From NCBI GenBank assembly GCA_965112735.1, contig OZ218962.1:2480001-2544000 (forward strand): a DNA stretch of 64,000 nt, given 5' to 3'. Every line of letters begins with the position of its first letter. Positions within the stretch are counted from its first letter, which is position 1. The notes beneath the pieces are model-generated. The model was not told the origin of the DNA and did no database searches. It saw nothing but the letters and a program-made list of their open reading frames with translations. This stretch comes from Phaeosaccion multiseriatum. Taxonomy: Eukaryota; Protista; Ochrophyta, other classes. Of the stretch, positions 3,047-63,284 are shown in pieces. Made by a program: the position numbers and the translations under genes.

Positions 3047-6000
3047 ATGGTCAAGGCCACAGCAGCAACTGGGGCGGCCCTCGTTTGCCTGGGCTGCGTG
3101 CTTGTTTCATCGACAGCGAGCAAGGTAGGCTAGGGTGTAACAAGGACCGCAAGAGAGCGGGGAGAAGGGAGGGGAGGGGGGAGGAGAGAGGGAGGAGAAG
3201 AGGAGGAGAGAAGATAGAGGGAGAGCGTGCCAAGGCGAAGAGGAGCTGCGCGGATCTTCTGGACGGGGAAGGCTCTCTCGTGGAGGCAGGCTGTCCTTTG
3301 TGGCCTGCAGGACGGCAGAGTGGAGCCAGTGTTGGACACACACGGCCCTGAGCACCATCGGGAACGGTCGCCATCATCGGAGGAGGGCGCAGTGGGAGGT
3401 GCACTGAGAGTTGAGACGCAGCGTACACGAGTGACGCAAGGACTGTGGTACGGGGCGCTCGCTTTATTGCACAGGAGCAGCAGAGAGAGAGGGGCGGGTG
3501 ATACCCTCCTTCACATGCCGAGCCGAGCTCCTGGAGTTCTGCAAGGGGGGCGCTTAATTGGGCCTTGACAATAGCATACGCGAGCCCTTGGAGCGCATAA
3601 TCGGTTCCTACGTTGATGCCTCTGCCTTGTCCTCCTAGATTACAGATTAAGTCTACGTAGCCCCTCACCTCCCCCCCCTTCTTGCTCTTTCTCTCGGCCT
3701 CTTTCCCTCTTCGCTCTGTCTCTCTCCCTCCCTCTCGAATCGAATCGAATTCATATCCACTCCCTCCCTCAACTTACCCATCCTCACCCCCTAACAGTTA
3801 GCTTTTGTGGCCCAGCCTGGCGCGTTTTCAGCAGCAGCAGGAAGAGTGCGAATAGGGGCCGGGGGGGTGGCAGCAGCAGCAGGGGGGGCGACTGTGGGAG
3901 GGCAAGAAGTGCCACCGTCATCAATATCATCAGGAGTGTCAGCCGCAGTAGGGCGGAGAACAGTACAGAGGCATGTATGCGGGCGTACTGGGGGGCGACC
4001 TGGGTGGGCACCACATCAAATGGTGGCGACTGAGGAGGGCATGGGAGAGAGCCAGCAGCGGAAGGAGGGGGGCGGAAGAAAGCCCATTCGGGTTTCTCCC
4101 ACTGCGCACGACCTGGGTGAGTGAGTGAGTGAGTGAGTGAGTGGGTGAATCGTTAGGGTTGACCTGCCGTATGCGTGAGTGAGTGAGTGAGTGAGTGAGT
4201 GAGTGAGTGAGTGAGTGGGTTATAGAGTGAGTTCCTGCGTGAATGGGTCGGTGAGTAACTCCGTAAATATGAGTGTAAGCTGCTGACTTGACATGTGCGT
4301 GCAATGCGTTGGAGAACAAACCAAAGCAAGGCTTGTGGTGGGTGTTTTGGTACAAGGACAAGCCTGTGGATCGCCTGTGGATCGCCTGTGACTGTGGTGG
4401 GTTGTGGTGGCTCCCCCTGAGTGCTCGAATGCAACCCCAATGTGCTCCCCCTGAGTGCTCGAATGCAACCCCAATGTGCTCCCCCTGAGTGCTCGAATGC
4501 AACCCCAATGTGCTCCCCCTGAGTGCTCGAATGCAACCCCAATGTGCTCCCCCTGAGTGCTCGAATGCAACCCCAATGTGCTCCCCCTGAGTGCTCGAAT
4601 GCAACCCCAATGTGCTCCCCCTGAGTGCTCGAATGCAACCCCAATGTGCAAGTGCGTGTGCAAGGGCGCGCGCGGGCGGGAGGCGGCTGGTGCGGTGTGG
4701 TGGGGTGGGGTGGGGGGGGATGAATGGGCGGGCTAACTTCTGAAACACCCTGTGACCGACCGTCACTGAGCCCTTGTCCACAACAAACACAAATGCAACG
4801 TTTTCTATATTTCTCACCTCCCTCCCTCCCTCCCTCACTCACTCACTCACAACCGCCTCCCATCCCATCCCATCCCATCCCATCCACTGCCATCCCATTT
4901 CGTCCCGGCCACCCACCCACCCACCCACCCACTCCTACCGACCTACCAGCCACGGGCCGCGACCCCACTCGAGTGAAAGTGTTTGACACCACTCTGAGAG
5001 ATGGAGAGCAGTCGCCGGGCTGCACTCTCAACGGGCAGGAGAAGATGGCGGTGGCCAAGCAGCTGAGTCGCCTGGGGGTTGACGTCATTGAGGCGGGCTT
5101 CCCTGTCGCCTCCAAGGGGGATTTCGAGGTACGTACGTGTGTGTGTTGTGTGTCTCTTTGGGGTCCCTTACGTAGGTACTTTTTGTCTCTTTTGTCCGCC
5201 TACCTCATTGTACGTACCTACATATATACCCACCTCTATCTCTCTCTCATCAGTCTACCTACCTATCCACCTCTCCATACGTTCCTACCTACCTTTGGAA
5301 AGGCTGTGGCTTCCATCGCGAAGGTGGTGGGGAACGGAAGCAATCCGCCCATCATCTGCGGTTTGGCCAGGGCTTTGACTAATGATATTGAGGTGAGAAT
5401 GGATGAAGGGGGGGGGGGGGAGGGAGGGAGGGAAGGGAGGAAGGGGAGAGAGATGGACCAAGAGGACGAGGAGAAGGAAAGAGAGGGGGGAGGGGGGAGA
5501 GAGAAGGAGGAGAGGGAGGATAAGAGGATAAGGAAGGAGCTTAGTATTCACTCCTTCCTCCTCTCAGGTGTGCTACGAGGCCATCAAGGGCGCTGCCTTC
5601 CCTCGCATACACACCTTCATCGCCACCTCCGACATTCACATGGAGCACAAGCTGCGCAAGAGCAGGGATCAGGTGTGTGGAGGATAAGTGCTGTCTTTTA
5701 CCCTCATATATGTATGGTCACTCTTTTCTCTCTTCTCTATTGTTGTCTCTCTCCTTCACTCCCTCAATCTTCCTCTCACGTTCTCAGTCCCTCTCCCTCA
5801 CTCTCTCTCTCTCACACACACTGACTCGCTTCTCAGTCAGTCTCCCTCTTCCTCTCACTCACTCACTGACTAACTCCATTCTTCTTGCACATTCGACTTT
5901 CCGCTTTGCACATCGACTTTCCATGTCCAGGTGCTCGACATCACGCGCGAGATGGTGACTCTGGCCCGTTCCCTCGTTGACGATGTCGAGTTCTCGGCCG

Positions 6001-10264: not shown

Positions 10265-11882
10265 TTAATTGGAAGCCACCACATAGCAAGGCCCAGTGAG
10301 CAATGGCAGCTCTCCCCCCCCCCCTCCTCCTCCTCCTCCTCCTTCCCCATTCCTGCCACCGCCACCGCCACACCCGCTGCTACCCTTGCTACTCCTTGGC
10401 GACTCATAGCAACCGTAGCCGGCTCCGTGGGGAAAGCCCCCTGCGCTACCACACACAACCTGCCGCACAAAGAAGCTCGGCATGGCGCTAGAGAAGAAGG
10501 TAAGGCAGTCGTCAGAGCCCCACTTGAAGAGCTGCATGAGAGAGGTGTGGGAGGGTGAGGATGTGGAATCCAGCTCTGAAGGCGGTGAAGGCTTTACGGT
10601 AGTGAGAGTAGGATCTGTTCCTCCTCCTCCTCCTCCTCCTCCTCCTCTTCCTCCTGCTTCTCCTCCTCTTCCTCCTGCCGCTCCTCCTGATCCTCCCCCT
10701 CTTCCTCCTGCTCCTCCTCCTGCTCCTGCTTCTCCTCCTCCTCCTGCTCCTCCTCCACTTCCTCCTCCTCTTCCTCCTGCCCCTCCTCCTGATCCTCCTC
10801 CTCTTCCTCCTGCTCCTGCTCCTACTGCCCCCACAGCGCGGGACGAAACGGTCGACGCCCCCACCATGCTGTCGTACATGCGTTGCAGACAGGAGAGGCA
10901 AAACACAGTCAAAGCACAGTCAAAACACAGTCAAAGCACAGTCAAAACACAGACACGTTTGTTTCCATGTTCATCGTCGTTGACAGGTGACAAGTCGCAC
11001 GAGGAGTGGAGGGGGGGGGGGTGATAACGGTGGGAGAGATGGAGAGAAGACAGGAAGGAGGGGGTGATAACGGTGGGAGAGATGGAGAGAAGACAGGAAG
11101 TGAGTGAGGGGGTGATAACGGTGGGAGAGATGGAGAGAAGACAGGAAGTGAGGAAGGGGGTGGGGCAGGACGTCTGAGTTTTGGAAATGAGCGAAGCGAC
11201 CTCTCTCTCATTTCCGAAAGATTACAGGGACAGAGAAGCGCAGGTATATATAGACAGAGACAGACAGACAGACAGACAGACAGACCTATATACATACATA
11301 CATACATACATACATACATACATACATACATACATACATACATACATACATACATACATACATGCATACATACATACATACATACATACATACATACATG
11401 CATACATACATACATACATACATACATACATACATACATGCATACATACATACAGACAGACTATCCCGACTATCCCGACCCCTCACCTTCCTCTGGCGGA
11501 CAGACCGGCGATCTCGCTCAATAGGGCCTCTACATCCTTCTCCTCGAGATACATGAGTAGCCCCTCCAGCACCCAAGCCGTCGGGAGAAGAGGGTCAAAG
11601 CCCGCCGAGATAAGCACCTCGCTCATCACTCTCACTCCCATATGCCCTTCTCTCTTCTCCTCTTCTCTCCCGTCGGGTCCGACAACATTCGCTCCCCCAA
11701 CGCACCCTTCTGTCCCTTCTGTCCTCCTCGCCTCCCTCTTCCTCCTCCTCCTGGCCACGCCACTTCTGCTGACCGAGGACGATACACTATCACCACCATC
11801 ATGGTCATGACCACCGCCGCTGTTCGTGTCGGGACTGATGCTACCTTCACTACGATACTTACTGCTCTCGCTGTTACCGTTA

Positions 11883-11917
<35 letters not shown>

Positions 11918-13248
11918 ATTGTTGCTGCTGCTGCTACTACCCAAGACGATGGGCACAGGTACCACTGTCTGTGTGGTGTGATGCCTGCCCTTCCTTCCGT
12001 CGAGCAGCACCGCCTTGAGCTCGAGAACCTCGCGCTGATCCACCTCGTACACCTATTGCATAGGGCAAGGGCAGACAGGCAGTCATACGGGCAAGGGCGA
12101 AGGGTCCGGGCAGAGGTGAGAGGCAGGGGTAGAGGCAGCGAGAGGGAGAGAGATGATTAAGAGAGGGAGAGAGAGGGGGGGGGTTGGGGAGAGGGAGAGA
12201 GGGAGAGGGAGAGGAGGGGGGCAGAGAGTCAGGGGCACGGGTAGAGGATGGGGCAGAGGAGCAAGGGGGAAGGCGTGGAGGGTCAAAGGTGTAGGCCCCC
12301 ACACGAAAAGACGAAAGACATCACTCCCACCTGTCACACCTCCACCCCACCCCCATCCACATTACCTTGGTGCCTTCGCCGAGATACAGCCGCAGTGCTC
12401 TGCTGTCCATCCCTGCCCCAACTATGACCACTTGTCGAATGCCTCTGAGGCATCGGAGGCAGAGGTTTCGTTCAAGTCAAAGCAGAGGAGGAGGAGGCGG
12501 GCGGACGGGCGGGCGGGCGGAATGTGGAGAGATGGTGATTGGGGAAGAGAGGGGGGGGGCGTTGAAAGCCCGGGACGATACGATGAGGTTACGAATAAAA
12601 ACAGGGGAATAAAAGAGAATTCATTAAACACCTGCGAGGGGGTGTTGTCTTCCCTCCGAGTTCACAAGTATACACAGCTGAACAGATGGAAAGTAATGAG
12701 CATATGTATTAACACAATAGCTCTGAGAGGGTGGTGCCTTACCTCCGAGTGGTGGCGTCTACCAGAAAGTCATCGAAGAAGCGCGTGCGGACGGCCAAGC
12801 GCCGGTGGTTCCTCCCCCAAGCACTTACAGTCCCACCACCTCCACGTCCTTCCCCTGGTTGATCATCCCCACCCGTAAAACCTTCCTCGATCTTGGCCTC
12901 CCTATCCATCTCAGCCCTCCTCTCCAAGACCTTTTGCATCTCCTCTTGACCAGCTAAGAGCTCAGCGAATTCGTCCTGGAAGAGGGAGTCGCCTTTGCCT
13001 CGGAGGCTTTCAATCGCACGCGCAGCAGCGATTTTGCGGCAACTGTTACGGATTGGATCGGCACTGACAGCTTCCACGTACTTCGCATCAACTCCTCTGT
13101 CGGCGCTCCCGCTCACAGTCAAGGGAGGTTGAGGAGTGGGAGTGGCAGCAGCAGTTGACGCTGAACCCCCCACTACCGAAGCGTCTGTCACCGCCAGCGT
13201 TGACAACAGAAGCGCATGAAGAGGGTGTCCCCCTCTCCTTCTAGCCAT
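10265..13248 (-). CDS. SAM-dependent methyltransferase, leucine carboxyl methyltransferase (LCM)-like family, ~4 exons
   Basis: IAAARAIES...FQDEFAELLAG, LAVRTRFFDDFL, VVIVGAGMDSRALRL (~12370-12430), VYEVDQREVLELK, AGFDPLLPTAWVLEGLLMYLEE and LFKWG. Contains Gly/Ser/Asn low-complexity inserts. Confidence 0.88.
11021..11150. repeat. ~42-48-bp intronic repeat x3
   Basis: GTGATAACGGTGGGAGAGATGGAGAGAAGACAGGAAG occurs three times. Confidence 0.9.
11288..11453. repeat. (TACA)n microsatellite
   Basis: Direct tandem repeat inside the methyltransferase intron. Confidence 0.95.
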
Positions 13249-13824
13249 ATCTCTTCGGTTGGCCGCCTACAAGAGACCCTTTGTAAGCAGAGACGAGGAC
13301 AAGGAAAGAGGAGAACGGAATGCGGCAGAGCAAGGGTGAGAAAAAGATAAAGGGAAGGCTTAGAGGTTCACGGTACACACTTGAAGGGGAACCTGCTTTT
13401 ATCTTGGACTTCTCGCTCGTTTGTGAGGGCAAGGCTTTTTCCTTGTGAGAAAGGACTTTACTTTTCTTGCATTGCTTGAGACAGGGGGGGCTTCTCTCTC
13501 CGAGCGAGCGACACGAAGGCATAAATAAAACACAAACAAACAAAACAAAGCACATAGACGGCATATAGGCTGGTGACCCGAGCAAGGGCCACAGAGAAGA
13601 GTTCTTGTTCAGGACTGACTTCATTTTAGGGTGCATGGGTCGCCGCCGTTGGCTCTCTCAGTCTAACAATTAAATCTCGCTCTACTTACGCAGGGTCTCT
13701 CATTCCAAAACGTCTGCGACCCGCCCTCTCATGGCAGTGGAGGGGCCCTCCACTCCCGTCTCCTGCCCCCTACCCCCCTTATCTTCCGATCAGCCTCTCA
13801 GCTAACCTCCCTGCAAAGTCATCC

Positions 13825-13953
13825 TTGATGGTTTGCTCAGATGCCCTCCTCCTCTCCAATTCTTCCTCAATGCCTTGCTCAGATGCACAGAGCGTACGAC
13901 CAAGCCATCAAGGAAGAATTGGAGAGGAGGAGGGCATCTGAGCAAGCCATCGA
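13825..13953. repeat. Inverted repeat / long hairpin (53-bp arms, 23-nt loop)
   Basis: 13833-13867 is the perfect 35-nt reverse complement of 13911-13945. The arms extend to 13825-13877 and 13901-13953 with about 5 mismatches. Confidence 0.92.
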
Positions 13954-14923
13954 GCAAGAATTGGAGAGGAGGACATTGCTCTGGAGCAGGTAATCGAGGC
14001 TGAGCTTTTCCTTCTCCTCCATCACACCACGAGCGAGGCAAAAGTGCCAGGGGAGACCCACGCAGATTCTCCAATACGCGCAGGCAGCCATCCTCGGCAG
14101 CAAACTGGGCGCGGTACCTAGGCGTATTCTACACCTCAAGGAAAGATGCAAAGTCCCTTCCTTCCTGACCTTTCAAGACGGAACCTAGCCATCCAGGAGT
14201 GGAGAGCGGAGGGGAGGATGGTGGTGGAGGTAGCTCTTTGACGTGCACTCCAGCCTTGCTTCGCCTGGGCATGACTCTGAAGGAGGCCCTGGATGACAAG
14301 CTAAGTGAAACCGCGGGGATGCTGCAACAACCCCGCCGTTTCACTCAGTTTGGCATCCAGGGCCTACTTCAGAGTCGTATGCCCAAGCGAAGACTGGAGT
14401 GCACGTCAAAGAGCTATCTCCACCACCATCCTCCCCTCTGCTCTCCGCTCCTATATGGCCTCCTGCATGGTGCGGGTCTTGCCCAGAACTTGCCGCTCCA
14501 CACCATCAGGACGTGCCTTTTCTTCAGAGTCTTCAGGTCGGCGCTGGCTGTGATTGATGTGGGGCAGCTCCTCCGTGCGTGATACACAACGAACAAAAGC
14601 CCGACGTGGCCGCACGAGAGCTCGCCTTCTTCTACACCAGCCCACGCCATGGCTCGTACCTTCCCACCGGCTTGAAGGAGGATCCGCGCCATCTTTCTAC
14701 ATGTGCAGTACAGAAGACACCACGCCTTTTCGACAGGGGCCGCTCAATACGGCCCGGCCCCTTCCGGGGCCTGCCGTGCCGTACGAAGCCCAGCAGGAAA
14801 GAAAGCCGGAGCGTGGTCTGGGAAGAAGTAGGGCGCATAACACAGGCATATGTCACAGGGTGCACGGGCAGGCACGAAAGATGCGAAGAGAGCGCGATAG
14901 AGACAGTGAACACACAAGACTGA
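13880..14923 (+). pseudogene. Probable decayed coding sequence of unknown family
   Basis: Microsatellite-free, protein-like frames broken by stops and frameshifts. An internal peptide repeat reads ARYLGVFYTS..LPS*PFKTEPSH versus ARELAFFYTS..LPTGLKEDPRH. Confidence 0.4.
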
Positions 14924-17909: not shown

Positions 17910-19937
17910 ACAGAGAAAGGCAGATGAGTCGACGGGTCGAGGGGGCGCGGGTGGTGGAGAGCGAAGAGCGAACAGCGACGCCCACCGTGGCTGGCCCTTA
18001 CACCCCTCACCTCCTTTTCTACAGACACATCTCCACAGATACACGTCCCCTCCTCTCTTCTCACACACGCACGCACCCACGCACTTACGCACTCACCAGC
18101 AGGAGGAAGCCCGCCAGGATGTTGAGGCTCTGGCAGTAGCCGACGGAGGGGTTCCGCAGCGCGTTGGCCCGCAGGACTCGCTGGGTAGAGGCATATGGTG
18201 GAGGCATATACATTCGTCGGGGGTATGGGGGTGGGTATGTGAGGAAAGAAGGGAGAGAGGAAGCGAGGGGGCGAGGGAAAGACCGAGGAAGTGACTAACG
18301 CCAGGAACGGACGGGCATCAGGAAGTGACCGGCCTTACCTTGAGGGACTTCCTCCCCACGTCCGTGTTGATGAAGGTCCTGCTCCCCCCAAACACGCGCC
18401 CCACGTCCACGTCAATGGTGCGGAATTGGTCGTACAGCCATTCGCGCTCCTCTGGAATCAGTCCATCTGTGACAACATCACTCGCCTCGACAGCAGCAGT
18501 AGCAGGAGGAGGAGCCGTCGGGGTGGTCTCTCGCTGCCCTGAGTCGCCGTCAGCGCCCACCTTCACCCACTCGCCATCCTCTCCACTCGACCCGCTCTCC
18601 TCCTCGTGATGCTGCTGCTTCAGCAAGGCTCGCTGCCTCGCCGCTGCCTTCTCCTTGATGGTAATCACTTCCAACGCTTGTCCCACTCGCTCCCCCCTTC
18701 TCACCAACCGCTCATAATACCCCTCGCCTCCTACTCCTCCTCCTCCTCCTTCTCCTCCTCCTCCTCCTTCTCCTCCTTCTCCTCCTCCCCCTCCCTCGTG
18801 CTGCATCCCCTCCAGCACATACCTCAGCTCCTCCACCACTCGGCTGTCCTCAGCGCCGGACACCAACATGTACACCGCCTCTCGGCACTGCACGGGCACC
18901 CCGTCCCACATGGATAGCTTCAAAGCCCTCCTCGCCCCCGCCTGCTCGGACCTCATCTCCTTAAGTAGCATCTTCTCGAAGCGAGCACCCTCCTCCTCCT
19001 CCTGCTCCTCCTCCTCCTCCTCCTCCTTCCCTTCCTCCTTCTCTCCCTCTTCCTCTTCTTCTCCGCCCCCTCCGCCCCTTTCCTCTCCTCTTCCCTTCAG
19101 CCCAGCGCCCGTCCCGGCCTGGGAAAGCCCTGTGCCGCCCCCAACATTGTCCCACACCCGCCTCCTCCCAACCAATGCTGCCGCTGCTCTGGTTGCCTCC
19201 CCGCCCTGCCACTCCTCCTCTCTCCTCCACACAAGCCCCATCGCCCTTCGTGCTTGTCTTATGTGCTCAGCGGGGACCACATGACCCTGAGGGTCGTAAT
19301 AGACTCTGTTCTTGCATTCGGGACCCGTGCCTTGTTGTCCTTTCCTCTCCTCCTTCTCGTCCTCCTCCTCCTCGCCGTCCTCCTCCTGCTGCGCCTTGAC
19401 CACTCCCACGGAAAGACAAAGGTCGATCCCATACCTCCTGGTAACAGTGCTTCCATCCATCCCTGTCACCTTGTGTACCACCTCTCCTCCGCTCCACCGA
19501 TCCAGCTCCACGTCCACTATTGCGCTGCTGCCTCGGCCGCCCCGCTGCAGCTGCTGCTGCTGCTGCTGGTGCTGCTCCTCTCCAGAGGGCTGCCCTTCGG
19601 AGGGGGTCCGCGGGCTCACCCGAAAGGTGTAACGGCCACCGTCCACGGAGCGTTCCGAGGGCTGTGCGGTTGGGAACCCAGCTGCCTTCCACCTCCTACT
19701 ACCAGCCTTACCAGCACTACCAGCAGGGTCGATACCCGCATACCAAGCGGTTGCAGCGTCGTCCTTGTCGCCCTCCTCACTGCTTACCAAGACGGCACGC
19801 TCTGCAGGCTTTTCAGGAGACTGAGGCGGCGACTTGGGGCCTCCTTCTTGAGGCAAGTCCCTCGCTCCACTGCCGGTGCCCTCACCCCCGTTGGTGGTAC
19901 GGCTGCTCACTGCAGTCGTCGCACTCTTGCTACCGTT

Positions 19938-19970
<33 letters not shown>

Positions 19971-21137
19971 GAAGCTCTGGGAGGGACCGTCACACTCCCC
20001 TGGTGGTGCTGGAAGCAAGTTGGCTCTCCCGATCGGCCTGCCCGTACCGTTGTTGCTGCTTGACTTGGTCAGTGGGAACTTGTCCTTCCTCCTGCTGTTG
20101 CTTGTGCCCACATCATTCTCCTTGTTCTTCGTGACGCATTCGACGATGGCTGTTCCTCCTTCTCCTGCCCCGAAGGGTCTCGTGCCCTCCTGTCTCGCCT
20201 CTCCGGCAGAGACAAGAGGAGACGAAGAGGAGGAGGGAGCAGCAGCAGTAGAAGCAGCTACCACCGTCATTGGATAGCTTCCCAGGAGCTCGTGCAGTGA
20301 GATCTCAAAGCGCCCGAACCGCTGCGGACGGAAGTTTGAGTCCATGTCATCCTTACCGTCGGTCTCGCCCTTCGATGGTGGCTGGGATTGGGTCCCCTGC
20401 CCTCCTTTGCCCCCCGCCCAATCTTCTTCCCCATACGGATCCACCCATGGTTTCAGCTTTCGGACCCTGTGCGTTGGGTCTTCGTAGACCTCCACTGTCA
20501 CCACCCGACCTTGCCTTCCGCCTCCTCTCGCCCCTCCTCCTCCTTCTTCTTCTTCTTCTTCTTCTTCTTCTGCTCCTCCTCCTCCTCCTGCTGCTGCTGC
20601 TGCCGATGGCACACCTCCTTCCAAGGAAAGAGCTGACACAGGGACACGCAGAACCCACACACCGGCCACCTTCAGCTTGCACGCCCTCTTACTGGGTGGT
20701 GCGGCTCGCCATTTGCCGTTCAGAGCTGAGTGTTTTTTGAACCGCACAGCCGCCGCTTTCGCTGCCGTCAGGGCCGAGTGCTCTGCCTCAGTGCCACTCT
20801 TGCCATCACCATCTCCATTATCATGGCCGAAGTGCTCCTCTCCCTCAATGCCTGTTCCTTCTGTCTGCCGGCATGTGCCCAGGGTGCAGCAGGACAAGGC
20901 GCAGAGAGGAAAGCACGCGCTGCTGTGGTGCTGGTCACCGTACCGAAGCACGACGTAAGGTCGCTCAGGAAGCGGAGGCACAGAGTCCGAAGGAGAGAAC
21001 AGCCCCACGTGCTTGTTCACTCTGTCTTTCTCCTCGCCCTTTCTGCTCAGCTTGGTAAACTGCAAGTGCTCACGACAGAGCAGGCCTTCCACCTGAATAC
21101 ACACAGGCACCGTTGGCTCCTCCACCGAGTTGGCCAT
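15878..21137 (-). CDS. TBC-domain Rab GTPase-activating protein with a long low-complexity N-terminal region
   Basis: GVPVQCREAVYMLVSG, TIDVDVGRVF (R-finger), RVLRANALRNPSVGYCQSLNILAGFLL (Q-finger), EEPAFWVLTTFCE, FLTPWFLCCFVNSFP. The large first exon runs 21137 to ~18339. A predicted last exon at 15923-15878 reads LKWQIRERFYRLSL*. Confidence 0.9.
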
Positions 21138-21313
21138 GGCTCCTCCACGACACACGTAGTCCGGCACTTAATAAGGTGTCACATCTCCTAGAGAACAGCG
21201 TTCTTGGTGTCGATTGTGCCTCGGCTGGGTACGGCCGGGTACCAACTGAAATTCACACCCCCCTCTTCTCCCCTCCCCCATTTCTTTTCTTCTCTCCCTG
21301 CGGCCTCTGCAGG

Positions 21314-30818: not shown

Positions 30819-31228
30819 GAGAGCTTGCATCAAGTGTTTGCCGAGTAAGTAACCAGTGTATAGCCGAGAAAGCAATCAGTGTATATGTATATTTCGTCGT
30901 AGAGCCACCACCAGGCGTGTAAGCGCTTGCGGTCTACCCACAGTTTCAGATTCAGTTTCAATTTACTAGCCCTTTGCCGCCGCCCCCGGGGGAACAGAGC
31001 TCCAGAGCCGCCTCCGTGCGGTCCTGACACCCCTCCCTGCTGGGCCGACTGGACTCTCAGTTTCAGTTTCAGTTCCATACACCTCTACCCATTGAGCCGC
31101 ACTCTCTTTCGAATACCCCTCTCGCTTGGGTCTGTACCGATCGGACACTCCGACTGATGAGTCCAAGCCGCAAGTCCCCTGAGCCAGTAGGGAAAATGAG
31201 TTTCAGTTCGACCAAATCGCTGGCCCTT

Positions 31229-31315
31229 TCGGCCCCTGACATGCTTCTGAGACAGGCCAGCCCAGAAGAAGGAAGCAGGCCGGCTGGCGCCGGCGAGAAG
31301 CATGTCAAGGGCCGA
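31229..31315. mobile_element. MITE copy (87 bp), TCG(A/G)CCCCTGAC-TIR family
   Basis: 20-bp TIRs TCGGCCCCTGACATGCTTCT and rc TCGGCCCTTGACATGCTTCT. Flanks GCCCTT/ACCCTT (6-bp TSD, one mismatch). The internal GCCGGCTGGCGCCGGC motif is shared with the 48.6-kb element. Confidence 0.78.
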
Positions 31316-31652
31316 ACCCTTGTCGCCCTTGGTTTGTGGAGCATAGCTAGTCTATCCTGCCTTCTCATTTGCTAAGCTTTGCCAAAAGGAGGAGTTCCAA
31401 ACGTTTTTCCCTGTACACAGTACGGTACTTGGTGCTATATATATATATATATATTATATATATATATATATCGTATGATTTGATTGTATACCAAAATGTG
31501 CCACTTTGCCGTCATCGCGGTGCATCAAAGTGCGCCGGTGAAAGTGACAGGGCCCAAAAAATATGCGCCATCTGTAAGCGTGATGCTGTAGTACCACGTC
31601 CCCTGCCACCCTCCTGCCATCTGTAAATCGTGGTGCTGTAGTATCACATCCC

Positions 31653-37579
<5,927 letters not shown>

Positions 37580-47701: not shown

Positions 47702-48559
47702 GGTGCTGGCCCTTCGGTTGGGTGGCTCCCTGACTGAAAGGCACCTGTGAAGGTAGGTACGCGGAGAAAGGGCAGTGGAGAGGGAAAGGAGGAAAGAGGT
47801 GGAATAGGGGGGGGTCAGAGTGACACAAAGGGGGGAGACGTGGGTTGAAAAGAAGGTACGGAGGGTGTACGGGACAATACGTTGCCAAGGCCGCGAGGCA
47901 GCAAGCCGCAGCTGGGCTTGGGGAGAGTGAGACAAGATTACTTTGTGCAGGATGATGGTGTAGGATGGAGGTACAGTGGAGCGAGGTGCTTCGTTAAGTG
48001 GGGGGGGGGGCTTCTCAAGGCCGTCAAGGCCGACGGCCGGCAACGTGATAAGTTCCGTCGCAGTAACACACCACTGAAAGGATTAGCAACAGGTGCAACC
48101 CAGAGCAGTAGCCAGAGTAGCAGCGGGGGGAATGTCACGCAAGAGAAGAAAGAGCATGCCAGAGCGCTGTGAACGGAAGGAGCACAGGCGAGGAAGGTAA
48201 GGGAGGGGACGGAGAAAAAGGCGCACGAGGAGGCCGGAAGGAAAGATCCATCCCTGCTTTTTTAATTCACACGGCAAAAAATAGGCAAGAACTCACCAAG
48301 AAAGGGGTGGGGAGTGGTAGCCGTGTGGCAGGGCTCGACTTCACACCTCCGCTATGATGCTTTTCTGCTGTCTCTCTCTACAAACCCTTCCTTTGAAGCG
48401 AGCTCGGCCAAAATTGCAAATTTTCACGAAGACCCCCTGGGGGCCACACTTGGTAATTCGCCATTGATTCACAAATGGCGCCCGCGTACAGGGGGAGGAG
48501 GGAGGAGGAGGAAGAGGAAGAGAAATTACGGGAAAGTGTTTTTGACTACCACAACACGA

Positions 48560-48796
48560 TCGACCCCTGACACACTATCCGCTATCCGCTATCGCCGGCG
48601 CCAGCCGGCGCGCTATCCGCTATCGGCCGGCGCCAGCCGGCACGCTATCCGCTATCGGCCGGCGCCAGCCGGCGCGCTATCCGCTATCGGCCGGCGCCAG
48701 CCGGCACGCTATCCGCTATCGATAGCGCGCTATCGGCCCCCGGGGGGGCCGATAGCGCGCTATCGAGAATGTGGGCGATAGTGTGTCAGGGGTCGA
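48560..48796. mobile_element. MITE (237 bp) with perfect 20-bp TIRs and a 6-bp TSD
   Basis: TIR TCGACCCCTGACACACTATC at both ends. TSD ACACGA at 48554-48559 and 48797-48802. The interior holds a 32-bp tandem repeat (~4.4 copies) and a nested palindrome at 48719-48766. Confidence 0.92.
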
Positions 48797-48879
48797 ACAC
48801 GACAACCGCCCTCCCTCTCAGTATATAATCCCTACTTCTCCCCTTTTCTCTGTACGATAGCATAGCCCTGTGGGCTATT

Positions 48880-48949
48880 GGCCGCCGGCTGGCGCCGGCG
48901 GTAGCAAGTAGCACGTCGGCTTGGCAGCAGGTAGCACGTCAAGGGTCGA
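48880..48949. mobile_element. Orphan end of a related MITE
   Basis: GCCGGCTGGCGCCGGCGGTAGCAAGTAGCACGTCGGC...GCACGTCAAGGGTCGA shares its motif and terminus with the 31.3-kb and 56.6-kb copies. No partner TIR was found. Confidence 0.7.
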
Positions 48950-55264: not shown

Positions 55265-58200
55265 ATGGTATCCCGAAGGGTGCAGGCCACAGTTTTACTG
55301 TATACCACGAAGCCGGTCGCTTCTGGATATTCGTCCGCCGCTGCTGTTGGAGACAGAAATCATGCCTTGGCTTTTGGAGGCAAACCCGCAAAGCCTTTGC
55401 AAAGAGCGCTCTCAACATTCATTGGAAGAAAGAGACCGCGGGGAGAATGTACCAACCATCAGACGGCCAGACGGTCTCGACGTGCAAGACCCTACGGCAG
55501 CGCACCTGGCCGAAGCGACCTCTCCTTTGTTCGTTGCTCGTTTGCCTTCAATGCCCCTCGCGGGGGGAGCAATACGCTCAGCAGTAGTGGCAGCAGCAGG
55601 AGCAGCATAAGCGGTATCAGTGGTGGCGGTGGGGAGGTTCACCTGTATATCCGGCAAGGGCTGAAATGCGGAGGATGCGTTTCCAAGGCAGAAGGTAAGG
55701 GCGAGTGGGAGTGGGAGTGGGGGGGATGGCCCACAGTCAGGAGCGCTTCGGCAATAAGAAGTAAAAGGGCGGAAGCCTTTTTTGGTAGTGTGGATAAGCA
55801 TCTGAACCCTGACCCTGACCTTGACCTTCGTGTGCTGCTGCTCTCACGTAACACAATTCTCCTCGCGGAAGCGGCACTTCTGGGCGTGGCAGGCGTAGAC
55901 AAGGCTGCGGTAGATCTCCTCACGGGCCGAGCTACAGTCACCTTCAAGCATCAGCAAGGCTTGCCCGAAGAGCAACTCTCCCTCCCCCAGCCTGGCGATC
56001 CTTCAGGTAGTTGGGCCTCTGTTGCCTGGCGTGGCGTCTCTCTCTCTCTCTCGCATGCTCTCTCTTTTTCTTTTACTGGCTCGCGCGCTCTATCTCTCTT
56101 TCTTTCGCTCTCGCTCGCTCTCTCTTCTCTCCCTCTCTCTCTCTCGCTCTCTCTCCGTCCTTTGCCATTCGTCGCATTTAGGCAGCCTCGCCTCCGAATC
56201 CATGCAAAAACGCGCTGTGCCCCTCCCCACTTGCATTGAATGTTTGGTATGTACCCAAGAGAAAACATACGTAAGTGATGAATTCTCTCTCTCTATGTGT
56301 GTCTACTCGCGCTCTCTACCAGCTTCCCTCCCGGGGCCAGGAGACGTGCTTGTCGCCGCGCTGTCGAGGTCCGGGTTTGAGGCCGTCGAGCTACCTCCTT
56401 ACAGCAGCAGCAGCATGTCCCACGGAACTGGCACTGACACTGGCACTGCCTCTGCGCTGGATAGGCTCAGGGAGGAGCACAGAGAGACGCGCCGCAGAGT
56501 GCTCATGAGTGCGGGTGAGTGATTCAATACAGGCGCCTAGGCGAGAAATAGAGGAACGTAGGCTAGAAAGAGTTGACCCTGACGTATTATATACACGCCT
56601 TCTCGGTGGCATGCTACTGGTCTCCGGCCGGTAGCAAGTAGCACGTCGGCTGACGCCGGCGGTAGCAGGTACCACTTCAGGGGTCGAAAATAGTAGTGGA
56701 GAGTGAATGAATATAGGATGGATTTGTAGCAGCCACCCTTTCCTTGATTCTTCTCTCTTCGCCCACCCCTCCCTCTCCCTCTCTCCTTCCCCACCTTCGA
56801 TCCTTGTTTCCTTCCTTCCTTGCTTGCTTGCTTCTCTCTCTCCATGTGAGTAGGGCTGGTGGGTGCGGCAGGCTTGGGGCATGCGGCTCATGTGTGGGGC
56901 TCTCTCCACGAGGTATTGCCCGCCTTCCTGTCCTCGAATACGTTCCAAGCAGTGCTGGCGACGCTCACGTAAGTTAAGGAAAGAGGGAGGGAGAGGAAGA
57001 AGTGAGATCGAGAGAGAGGCAGACAGACAGAGAGAGAGGTGGAGGAAGGAAGGGAGGGAGAGAAAGAGAGAGAGGAAGGGAGGGTGGAGCGAGAAAGTGC
57101 CATCTGCTCTATGGGCAAACAAGAAGGCCTGTATTCGGTGCTAACACCTCCTCCGCCTTCTCTTCCCCTCCTCCCCTCCCCCCCCCTCCTCCTCCTCCTC
57201 CTCCGTACCCTCTCCTCAGCCTCGCCGGCCCTGGGCGGCATATCCTTCGGGACGGCTTTGCCAGCTTGGGTCGCGCGAACCCCAACATGAACAGTCTCGT
57301 AACCATGGGCAGTGTGGCTGCCTACGTGTCCAGTCTCTCCGCCTGGCTGGGATTGCTCCCCGGGGGGCTCGGGGTGCACCCCGTTTGCTTCCACGAACCT
57401 GTTATGCTAATTGGAGCTATCCTGGTAAGCGGTAAGCTTGCTTCGTTACCCACCTCACCTCACCTCACCCACCACCCACCCACCCACCCACCCATTTTGT
57501 ACACACATTTATTGTGTAGGTCTAGTGCTCTCTTGCTTAATGCACCCTTTTGCTAAAACCTTTGTCCTTTTTTTCCCCCCTCTACTGTCCATTTCCTTGT
57601 CTCGTGCTGCATGCATCTATACCACCTACGTACCTACATACGTATATCTCCAATGTCATCTCATCTCACCTGATCGCATGTCTCTGCCCATATGCCTGCC
57701 TTCCAACACAACCATTAATATTATAATTATTATTATTAGCTCGGCCGCTCTCTGGAGGTGGGCGCTAAGCTGCGGGCCAGCTCGAGTCTCCAGGCCCTCC
57801 TGAAGCTGCAGCCCTCCACCGTCACGCGCATCGTGTCTCACTCCACAAGAGGGGTAGCACGAGGAGGAGGAGGAGGAGGAGGAGGAGGAGGTGGTGGAGC
57901 AGCAGCAGAAGGAGGAGCAGGAGAAGGAGGAAGAGGGGGAGGAGGAGGAGGAGGAGGAGGAGGAGGAGGAGGAGGAGGAGGAGGAGGAGGAGGAGGAGGA
58001 GGTGGTGGAGCAGCAGCAGAAGGAGGAGCAGGAGAAGGAGGAAGAGGGGGAGGAGGAGGAAGAGCAGCAGCACCACCACGACCAGCAGCAGCAGTAGGAG
58101 GAGGAGGAGTGGAAGTATTCGAAAGTGTGCCCCTGGAAACCGTCGCCGTCGGAGATGTGGTCCTCGTCCACCCCGGGGACCGCATCCCTGTTGATGGAGT

Positions 58201-62170: not shown

Positions 62171-62339
62171 GGAGTTGTATCGTGGGAGAAGAAAAGCACA
62201 CAACACAAAATAGACACCCCACAAAACAGAAAGGAGTTTTTTTGATGTAGTTTTGGTAGCCCCGCTCCCCCCCCCACACCAGGAGGGGTGGGGTGGGAAA
62301 CCGGGCTTTCGTTTATATGTAAGTCATTATTTATAGCAT

Positions 62340-62765
62340 CCTCCCACTCGGGAGGGTAGGAAACTCTGAAAAGCGTAAGGGAACGCACAATTCAGTAGAG
62401 AGACGGACGGACAGACAGACAGACAGACAGACAGCTAGAGCCCTCCCGCAATCGGGAGGGTGGAATCTGAAAGGCGTAGGGAACGCACAACTCAGTGGAG
62501 AGGCACATAGACAGACAGGCAGATAGACAGACAGACACACAGACAGTGTCAGCCAGCGAGCCAGGCACCAGCCCGACAGAACAAGGCAGCCTTACAAGGC
62601 CGTCGTCGGAGAGGGAGGAGAGTGATTCGTCGCGCATTCGCCACCTAGCACAAGCGCGCAAGTGTGCTTCGCTGGTACCACCCAAGCAGGCTCGGCAGGT
62701 GAACTGGAGCCTCTCAAGACACTGGAGGAGTCTTTTTTCGCGCTGCTGGTGCCCTGCTGCTCTAC

Positions 62766-62797
<32 letters not shown>

Positions 62798-62878
62798 CCT
62801 CCCCCTCCCCCCGGCTCCCCCTCCCACACTTAGGAGGGCAGGAAACTGAAAGGCGTAGGGGTTACGAACAACTCAGCC

Positions 62879-62930
<52 letters not shown>
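62340..62930. repeat. Three diverged ~60-bp direct repeats, each followed by (GACA)n
   Basis: CTCCC..GGAGGG..GAAA..CTGAAA(A/G)GCGTAGGG..ACAACTCAG at ~62340, ~62442 and ~62820. Confidence 0.8.
62594..62729 (+). pseudogene. Inverted, decayed copy of the cyclin last-exon 3' end
   Basis: The plus strand reads ARKCASLVPPKQARQVNWSL; the cyclin on the minus strand reads ERKFASLVPPKQALQLDWSL. The DNA matches the reverse complement of 62933-63075. Confidence 0.85.
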
Positions 62931-62944
62931 CATCCTCCGTATCT

Positions 62945-63284
62945 TTAGAGGCTCCAGTCCAACTGCAGAGCCTGCTTGGGCGGCACCAGCGAAGCAAACT
63001 TGCGCTCCTCGGTGCTGTATCTGCGGCGAACGACGCCTCGGCTGATCTCTCCTCCCTCTCCGAAGACGGACTTGTGTACGCGATGCAAGTCTTGCACGCA
63101 CGCACGCACATCGCCGAGCTCGAGCTTCATCATCAGAAGCTCCTTTCCCTCGCGGTCAGTGCCGATACAGCTGGTACTGCTCCTGCTACCATCACCGCCA
63201 TCACCCCTCCTTCCGCGGCCACTGCTGTCGCCGTAGCTGCTGCTGCCATCGTAGTTGCTAGTGCTACTGCTGCTGCTACTACTG

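What the first reader, a model, noticed from the sequence alone, without database searches (positions are those of the whole stretch)
48554..48802. MITE family with TCGACCCCTGAC termini and 6-bp target-site duplications, four copies in 64 kb
Seen: 48560-48796 has perfect 20-bp TIRs flanked by an exact ACACGA duplication. Related two-ended copies lie at 31229-31315 (GCCCTT/ACCCTT) and 56573-56687 (AAAGAG/AAATAG), with an orphan end at 48949. The copies share terminal and sub-terminal motifs (GCCGGCTGGCGCCGGC, GTAGCAAGTAGCACGTC) but have different interiors. Known: 6-bp TSDs are uncommon among eukaryotic TIR elements (Polintons, IS3EU, hAT6), and TCGAC ends match none that I recognise. Inference: an abundant non-autonomous family moved by an unclassified transposase, possibly recently, since one copy has perfect TIRs and TSD.
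Basis: partly seen in the sequence, partly recalled or inferred. Interest (0 to 1): 0.8.

Follow-up and report, generated by a model that had tools for sequence, protein, structure and literature searches.

The report
Short inverted-repeat transposons, 6-bp duplications
Three complete and one or two broken copies of a tiny, non-coding "jumping DNA" family lie in non-coding stretches of an intron-rich, alga-like genome; the copies are real and the family cannot yet be placed in a known group, but it is an ordinary kind of element (a MITE).

Summary
Copy A (48560-48796) has perfect 20-nt inverted ends and a perfect 6-nt flanking repeat. Copies B (31229-31315) and C (56573-56687) have related ends and 5/6 flanking repeats. 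D (to 48949) has one end only, and a fifth, degenerate end may lie at 48338. Six nucleotides is the only flank-repeat length that fits all three two-ended copies.

The copies share a lopsided design. One end carries the 12-nt terminus, short 7-nt repeats and a 16-nt motif made of two GCCGGC hexamers. The other end carries only the terminus. Copy A's internal 32-nt tandem array is that module amplified.

None of the copies can code for protein, and no transposase, integrase or reverse transcriptase domain was found in any ORF of 150 aa or more in the window. The host is an unsampled ochrophyte-like eukaryote. Scans of viral, metagenome and prokaryote collections gave only chance hits.

The best reading is a non-autonomous inverted-repeat transposon family moved in trans by an unidentified enzyme. 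Genome-wide abundance, recency and "unclassified" status could not be tested. This is a new member of a known kind, of modest interest.

The parts
48560..48796 (-). Copy A, 237 bp, two-ended. The motif-bearing end is on the left, so A is inverted relative to B, C and D.
   Evidence: Perfect 20-nt inverted ends (I3). Stop codons in all six frames. Strong hairpin potential, z = -9.1.
48554..48559 (.). Left copy of the 6-nt target duplication of A
   Evidence: Identical to 48797-48802.
48797..48802 (.). Right copy of the 6-nt target duplication of A
48580..48721 (.). Tandem array inside A: period 32, 4.5 copies. Each unit is the 16-nt motif plus two 7-nt repeats. Units alternate, giving a 64-nt higher-order repeat whose copies are 100% identical.
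   Evidence: period 32, 96% matches; D1.
48719..48766 (.). Perfect 23+23-nt palindrome inside A, next to the end that lacks the 16-nt motif
   Evidence: I2.
31229..31315 (+). Copy B, 87 bp, two-ended, with one exact 16-nt motif at 31279-31294 next to the right end. Flank repeats lie at 31223-31228 and 31316-31321 (5/6).
   Evidence: Hairpin z = -5.2.
56573..56687 (+). Copy C, 115 bp, with a degenerate left end and a diverged 16-nt motif at 56645-56660. Flank repeats lie at 56567-56572 and 56688-56693 (5/6). It lies inside the span of a heavy-metal P-type ATPase gene on the + strand, 57 nt after a GTGAGT at 56515.
   Evidence: Stops in all three + frames.
48854..48949 (+). Copy D, one-ended: the motif-bearing right end (terminus 48938-48949, 16-nt motif 48884-48899) and a small hairpin. 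No left terminus is present, and the left bound is uncertain.
48315..48338 (+). Candidate E: a possible fifth, decayed right end (2 mismatches in the 12-nt terminus, preceded by one 7-nt repeat). Weak.

Best explanation
[quoted passage not shown] They are short, non-coding derivatives of a DNA transposon and carry only the sequences an enzyme needs at the ends. An enzyme encoded elsewhere in the genome would bind the roughly 12-nt inverted termini. It probably also binds the sub-terminal 7-nt repeats and the paired GCCGGC hexamers that sit at one end only. It would then insert the element at cuts staggered by 6 nt, and repair of those cuts leaves the 6-nt duplication. Shown here: the inverted ends, the 6-nt duplications, the relatedness of the copies, the lack of coding capacity, and the absence of a partner gene in the window. 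Inferred: action in trans, the DDE-type chemistry, and a binding role for the sub-terminal motifs. The 32-nt array in A is best read as slippage-type amplification of the sub-terminal module after or during the spread of its subfamily.
For: Perfect 20-nt ends plus a perfect 6-nt flank repeat in A. The same flank-repeat length fits B and C at 5/6 each, and no other length from 2 to 10 fits. The motif-bearing ends of A, B, C and D align module by module (alignment A1), and the other ends share the terminus only. Most ends differ by at most 1 in positions 1-11, and all copies have the same duplication length. That meets the Repbase rule for filing non-autonomous elements together (PMC4455052). 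Within a copy the two ends agree (0/20 mismatches in A, 1/20 in B), while between copies they differ at 4-7 of 20, as expected of subfamilies. The 16-nt motif is confined to the copies. A has stops in every frame and C in every frame of its host gene's strand. No transposase, integrase or RT domain was found in the 85 of the 86 ORFs of 150 aa or more that were scanned; the one left unscanned runs through copy A and found no relatives.
Against: Only five ends at three independent loci were seen. No long, coding copy, no empty site and no copy from any other sequence could be found. Two of the three duplications are imperfect, and C's left end is poor. Nothing shows when, or whether, any copy last moved.
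Confidence: 0.8

Rival explanations
1. The family is moved by a retroviral-type (rve-like) integrase, that is, it derives from a Polinton/Maverick or Polinton-like virus, or from an IS3EU/GingerRoot transposon. This refines the main explanation rather than denying it.
For: Six-nt duplications are the stated norm for Polintons, IS3EU and GingerRoot (PMC10045372), and 5-6 nt for rve-encoding Polinton-like viruses of algae, ochrophytes included (PMC12220804). The observed length here is 6.
Against: The ends here read TC..GA. IS3EU is always TA..TA, GingerRoot is TA..TA or TG..CA (PMC10045372), and vertebrate Mavericks end in AG/AGT repeats (PMC8097293). No polymerase, capsid or integrase domain was found in the window. 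There were no matches in the viral contig collection.
Confidence: 0.2
2. The copies are not mobile. They are structural or regulatory palindromes, such as protein-binding sites or hairpins, and their flank repeats are coincidence.
For: The 16-nt motif is two palindromic hexamers one helical turn apart, typical of a dimer-binding site (read directly from the sequence). A and B fold far better than shuffles.
Against: The joint chance of 6/6, 5/6 and 5/6 flank repeats at bounds fixed by the inverted ends is about 2 in 10 million from the window's own background. The interiors differ while the ends are kept.
Confidence: 0.03
3. They are introner-type elements, that is, transposons that create new introns by bringing or completing splice sites.
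For: The host is intron-rich, and C lies in intron-like DNA of a gene.
Against: No copy, with or without one hexamer, begins with GT and ends with AG on either strand in a way that would restore the target (read). C lies 57 nt inside a stretch that already starts with a GTGAGT.
Confidence: 0.02
4. Whatever their origin, the copies now act as hairpin sources of small RNAs or as gene-proximal regulatory modules. This is a reading of function, compatible with a MITE origin.
For: Strong hairpins in A and B. A, D and candidate E cluster within 635 bp of non-coding DNA between long ORFs.
Against: No expression data are available. C and D do not fold better than shuffles. No Rfam family matches.
Confidence: 0.1

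Closest known systems
MITEs with sub-terminal repeated motifs, e.g. Arabidopsis Emigrant bound by the Lemi1 proteins (PMC1636448, title and abstract)
   Same: Short, non-coding, with inverted ends and repeated sub-terminal motifs, and dependent on an enzyme made elsewhere.
   Different: By that paper's title Lemi1 is pogo-like, and the Mariner/Tc1/pogo group generally makes TA duplications (PMC10045372). Here the duplication is 6 nt, and the sub-terminal motifs sit at one end only.
IS3EU / GingerRoot DNA transposons (PMC10045372)
   Same: 6-nt target duplication and short inverted ends.
   Different: Their termini are TA..TA (occasionally TG..CA). The termini here read TC..GA. No transposase is available to compare.
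Polinton/Maverick elements and Polinton-like viruses (PMC8097293, PMC12220804)
   Same: 5-6-nt duplication and inverted ends. Polinton-like viruses are reported in ochrophyte genomes.
   Different: Those are elements of tens of kilobases (Polinton-like viruses 14-40 kb) with inverted ends of hundreds of nt and their own genes. Vertebrate end motifs are AG/AGT repeats. Nothing of that kind is in the window.
Dada transposons (PMC3706591)
   Same: 6-7-nt duplication.
   Different: Dada has no terminal inverted repeats and inserts into U6, U1 or tRNA genes. Here the ends are inverted repeats, and the window holds no tRNA or Rfam RNA gene.
TcMar-N1_Ec32 and other MITEs of the brown alga Ectocarpus (PMC12477816)
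   Same: MITEs of about 200 bp in a related algal lineage, frequent in introns and near genes.
   Different: A different superfamily. No sequence relation was tested or expected.

Membership tests
MITE (generic) | Short (tens to a few hundred bp), with no coding capacity | tested here: met
   Lengths are 87, 115 and 237 bp. A has stops in all six frames and C in all three frames of its host gene's strand.
MITE (generic) | Terminal inverted repeats | tested here: met
   A 20/20, B 19/20, C about 10/12 with one gap.
MITE (generic) | Target-site duplication of constant length | tested here: met
   6 nt in 3 of 3 two-ended copies (6/6, 5/6, 5/6). No other length fits.
MITE (generic) | High copy number in the genome, and a related autonomous element | not testable with these tools
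   Only this window is available. All routes to more of the genome failed.
One family/superfamily by the Repbase rule (PMC4455052) | Same duplication length and at most 1 mismatch in terminal positions 1-11 | tested here: met
   A(left)/A(right)/C(right) have 0 mismatches to one another, and B(left) and D have 1 to A. B(right) has 2 to A but 1 to D. C(left) fails because of its indel.
IS3EU / GingerRoot | 6-nt duplication | tested here: met
   PMC10045372.
IS3EU / GingerRoot | TA..TA (or TG..CA) termini | tested here: not met
   The ends read TC..GA in every copy with a good end.
Polinton/Maverick, Polinton-like virus | Protein-primed polymerase, rve integrase and capsid genes between long inverted ends | tested here: not met
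   No such domain was found in any scanned ORF of 150 aa or more in the window. A derived MITE would lack them anyway, so this test says little.
Polinton/Maverick | AG- or AGT-repeat end motifs (vertebrate elements, PMC8097293) | tested here: not met
   The end motifs of protist elements could not be compared.
Dada | No terminal inverted repeats, and insertion into small-RNA genes | tested here: not met
   Inverted ends are present. The window has no tRNA or Rfam hit.
Introner-type elements | Element plus duplication supplies GT..AG bounds and forms the whole intron | tested here: not met
   The bounds were read, and no GT..AG pair restores the target.

The most novel reading that the evidence does not exclude
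The copies are the first sighting of an undescribed group of inverted-repeat DNA transposons in an unsampled ochrophyte-like lineage. Its marks would be TC..GA ends, a 6-nt duplication and a one-sided array of paired GCCGGC hexamers as the enzyme's landing site. Its partner would be either a new transposase lineage or the integrase of an endogenous Polinton-like virus that these small elements exploit.
Probability: 0.12. Interest if true: 0.55.

Novelty: new member of a known kind. Interest (0 to 1): 0.3.

Why it matters
MITEs are everywhere, so the kind itself is not news. There are three points of modest value. First, few groups of eukaryotic inverted-repeat elements make 6-nt duplications, and this family's ends match none of those I could check. 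A coding partner, once found in the source genome, could therefore extend the catalogue or link MITEs to virus-like integrases in algae. Second, the lopsided end design and the freshly amplified binding-site-like module in copy A give a clear, testable picture of which sequences the enzyme reads. Third, for annotating this poorly sampled genome the family marks introns and gene-flanking DNA, and copy A creates a false 155-aa ORF (48314-48781).

Tried and rejected
1. More copies elsewhere. I used short IUPAC scan patterns built from the letters seen at the terminus and the 16-nt motif. Viral contigs gave 0 hits in three scans. JGI metagenomes gave 2 hits and prokaryote genomes 3. All five lie in bacterial DNA, and three of them are one bacterial repeat. 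They have no second end and no 7-nt repeats, so I take them for chance.
2. The word search with the false ORF that runs through copy A gave no hit.
3. Exact look-ups of three window ORFs, to reach the source genome, found nothing on record.
4. The isopropylmalate synthase ORF piece found only relatives at about 57-72% identity. No close relative's genome could therefore be fetched for an empty-site test.
5. 46 kb around the same gene in Chrysoparadoxa and Choristocarpus holds neither motif. This is a small sample of distant algae.
6. A literature search for the motifs as text gave one irrelevant hit.
7. I considered and dropped a second two-ended pair at 11475-12133 (coding-like low complexity) and a match at 35611 (microsatellite).
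8. A left end for D at 48854 with a 5/6 flank match is not significant, because about 0.4 such matches are expected over the range searched.
9. Two pattern calls failed on syntax and were corrected, and one literature search failed on a disallowed term and was resent.

Full report
OBSERVATION. Every coordinate in the finding checks out. Copy A (48560-48796, 237 bp) has 20-nt arms that are 100% complementary (I3). The hexamer ACACGA abuts both ends. Copy B (31229-31315, 87 bp) has ends matching at 19/20, with flanks that agree at 5/6. Copy C (56573-56687, 115 bp) has a good right end and a left end with one substitution and a 1-nt deletion in the terminus. Its flanks also agree at 5/6. D is a right end only, at 48938-48949. 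A possible fifth, decayed right end (E) lies at 48315-48338.

STATISTICS. The 12-nt terminus with up to 2 mismatches is not rare on its own: 13 matches against 8.4 expected. The six best matches, however, are exactly the family's ends. The 16-nt motif occurs 6 times exactly, against 0.04 expected, and only inside the copies. Terminus and motif within 35 nt of each other occur 3 times, against none in 100 shuffles. A window-wide scan of my own for inverted ends plus flank repeats returned A as the only clean case. For flank repeats I tried every length from 2 to 10, and only 6 gives 6/6, 5/6 and 5/6. Against 200,000 random site pairs from this window, 6/6 has a frequency of 0.0015 and at least 5/6 a frequency of 0.011. 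The joint chance is therefore about 2 in 10 million.

ANATOMY. The copies are built alike and are lopsided.
- Read inward from one end, each copy shows the terminus, one to three 7-nt repeats of one loose type, and then the 16-nt motif. That motif is two palindromic GCCGGC hexamers set 10 nt apart (alignment A1).
- The other end has the terminus and then unrelated sequence (A2).
- The motif-bearing end is on the right in B, C and D and on the left in A, so A is inverted relative to the others.
- A's 32-nt tandem array (4.5 units) is this module (motif plus two 7-nt repeats) amplified. Units alternate at one base, and 64-nt double units are 100% identical (D1), so the amplification is young.
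- Within a copy the two 20-nt ends agree (0 mismatches in A, 1 in B), while ends of different copies differ at 4-7 of 20. The copies therefore belong to different subfamilies that keep the outer 12 nt or so.
- A and B fold into strong hairpins (z = -9.1 and -5.2). C and D do not exceed shuffles.

CONTEXT AND HOST. The window is from a eukaryote with 57% G+C, many microsatellites and many short introns. An isopropylmalate synthase gene appears as 12-13 exon-like pieces between 4952 and 9790. Its nearest named relatives are brown algae, Chrysoparadoxa and dictyochophytes, at about 57-67% identity, and unnamed metagenome proteins reach 72%. The host is thus ochrophyte-like, with no close relative in the collections. 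It is not human. Other host domains found were LCM methyltransferase, cyclin, ELO, and HMA plus E1-E2 ATPase.

Copy C lies inside the span of the heavy-metal ATPase gene on the + strand. It sits 57 nt after a GTGAGT at 56515 and has stops in all three + frames, so it most likely lies in an intron (inferred). Copy A has stops in all six frames and creates a false 155-aa ORF. A, D and E lie within 635 bp of one another, between long ORFs. This clustering is unlikely for random placement (roughly 1 in 1000 by a simple estimate). It suggests a favoured landing zone or local movement.

Exons were searched apart, by reference only.

PARTNER AND RELATIVES. No transposase, integrase or reverse transcriptase domain appears in the 85 scanned ORFs of 150 aa or more. 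The one ORF of that size left unscanned is the false one through copy A. Shorter exons could be missed. Scans of viral, metagenome and prokaryote collections, a word search with the ORF through A, exact look-ups and two loci from distant algae gave nothing beyond chance bacterial hits. The family is therefore known only from this window.

MECHANISM. The best-supported reading is a MITE family (confidence 0.8). An enzyme made elsewhere binds the inverted termini, and probably also the one-sided sub-terminal module. It inserts the element at 6-nt staggered cuts, and repair of those cuts gives the duplication. The ends, duplications, family structure and lack of coding are shown. Action in trans, the chemistry and the binding role of the motifs are inferred.

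COMPARISON.
- By the Repbase rule (same duplication length, at most 1 mismatch in positions 1-11; PMC4455052), most ends fall into one group.
- By duplication length the family fits IS3EU/GingerRoot and Polinton (6 nt), and Polinton-like viruses with rve integrase (5-6 nt) (PMC10045372, PMC12220804).
- By termini it fits neither IS3EU/GingerRoot (TA..TA, rarely TG..CA) nor vertebrate Mavericks (AG or AGT repeats; PMC8097293).
- Dada shares the duplication length but lacks inverted ends and targets small-RNA genes (PMC3706591). The window has no such gene.
- The copies are not introner-like, because no GT..AG pair at the bounds restores the target.
- Other superfamilies have other duplication lengths according to PMC10045372, apart from MuDR (4-10 bp), which overlaps 6 nt. 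I could not compare ends for MuDR or for hAT without Repbase or Dfam.

VERDICT. The feature is real. It is a new member of a known kind, and its superfamily is open. Interest is 0.3. The main limits are the small sample (three loci), the lack of a coding partner, the lack of an empty site and the lack of a repeat library.

Noticed in passing
window 14188-14459: A 272-bp near-perfect palindrome (arms about 136 nt, 86-91% complementary), unrelated in sequence to the family. It may be another hairpin-type element or an inverted duplication, and a 3-nt flank repeat is doubtful.
   Followed up: partly
window 13806-13973: A 168-bp hairpin built from 42-nt units in inverted pairs (83-93% complementary), 215 bp upstream of the palindrome above.
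   Followed up: no
window 62594-63075: Nested inverted repeats (arms of 29 and 67 nt, 88-93%) beside (CAGA)n-rich direct repeats of about 100 nt at 62332-62939.
   Followed up: no
window 4410-4649: A 68-nt unit repeated in tandem about 3.5 times at 100% identity, about 300 bp upstream of the first exon-like piece of the isopropylmalate synthase gene.
   Followed up: no
window 48315-48949: Three family ends (E, A, D) lie within 635 bp, while the other two copies are 17 kb and 8 kb away. This is a local cluster that random placement would rarely give.
   Followed up: partly
L001 796-844; L003 5284-5332; L005 5037-5085: My scan pattern hit one and the same bacterial sequence in a soil metagenome contig and twice in one alphaproteobacterial MAG. 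It is a repeat in that bacterium, with no second end and no 7-nt repeats, and I take it as a chance likeness.
   Followed up: partly
window 18318-21167 (- strand): A 949-aa open frame rich in G, E, A and S, in the most G+C-rich part of the window (62%). It has no Pfam domain and no exact record, and it may be a low-complexity gene or not a gene at all.
   Followed up: partly
window 30000-58000: Very dense microsatellites: long (GT)n, (CA)n, (AGGA)n, (GTGA)n, (GAGT)n, (GAAG)n and (GAG)n runs, 57 tandem-repeat rows in 28 kb.
   Followed up: no
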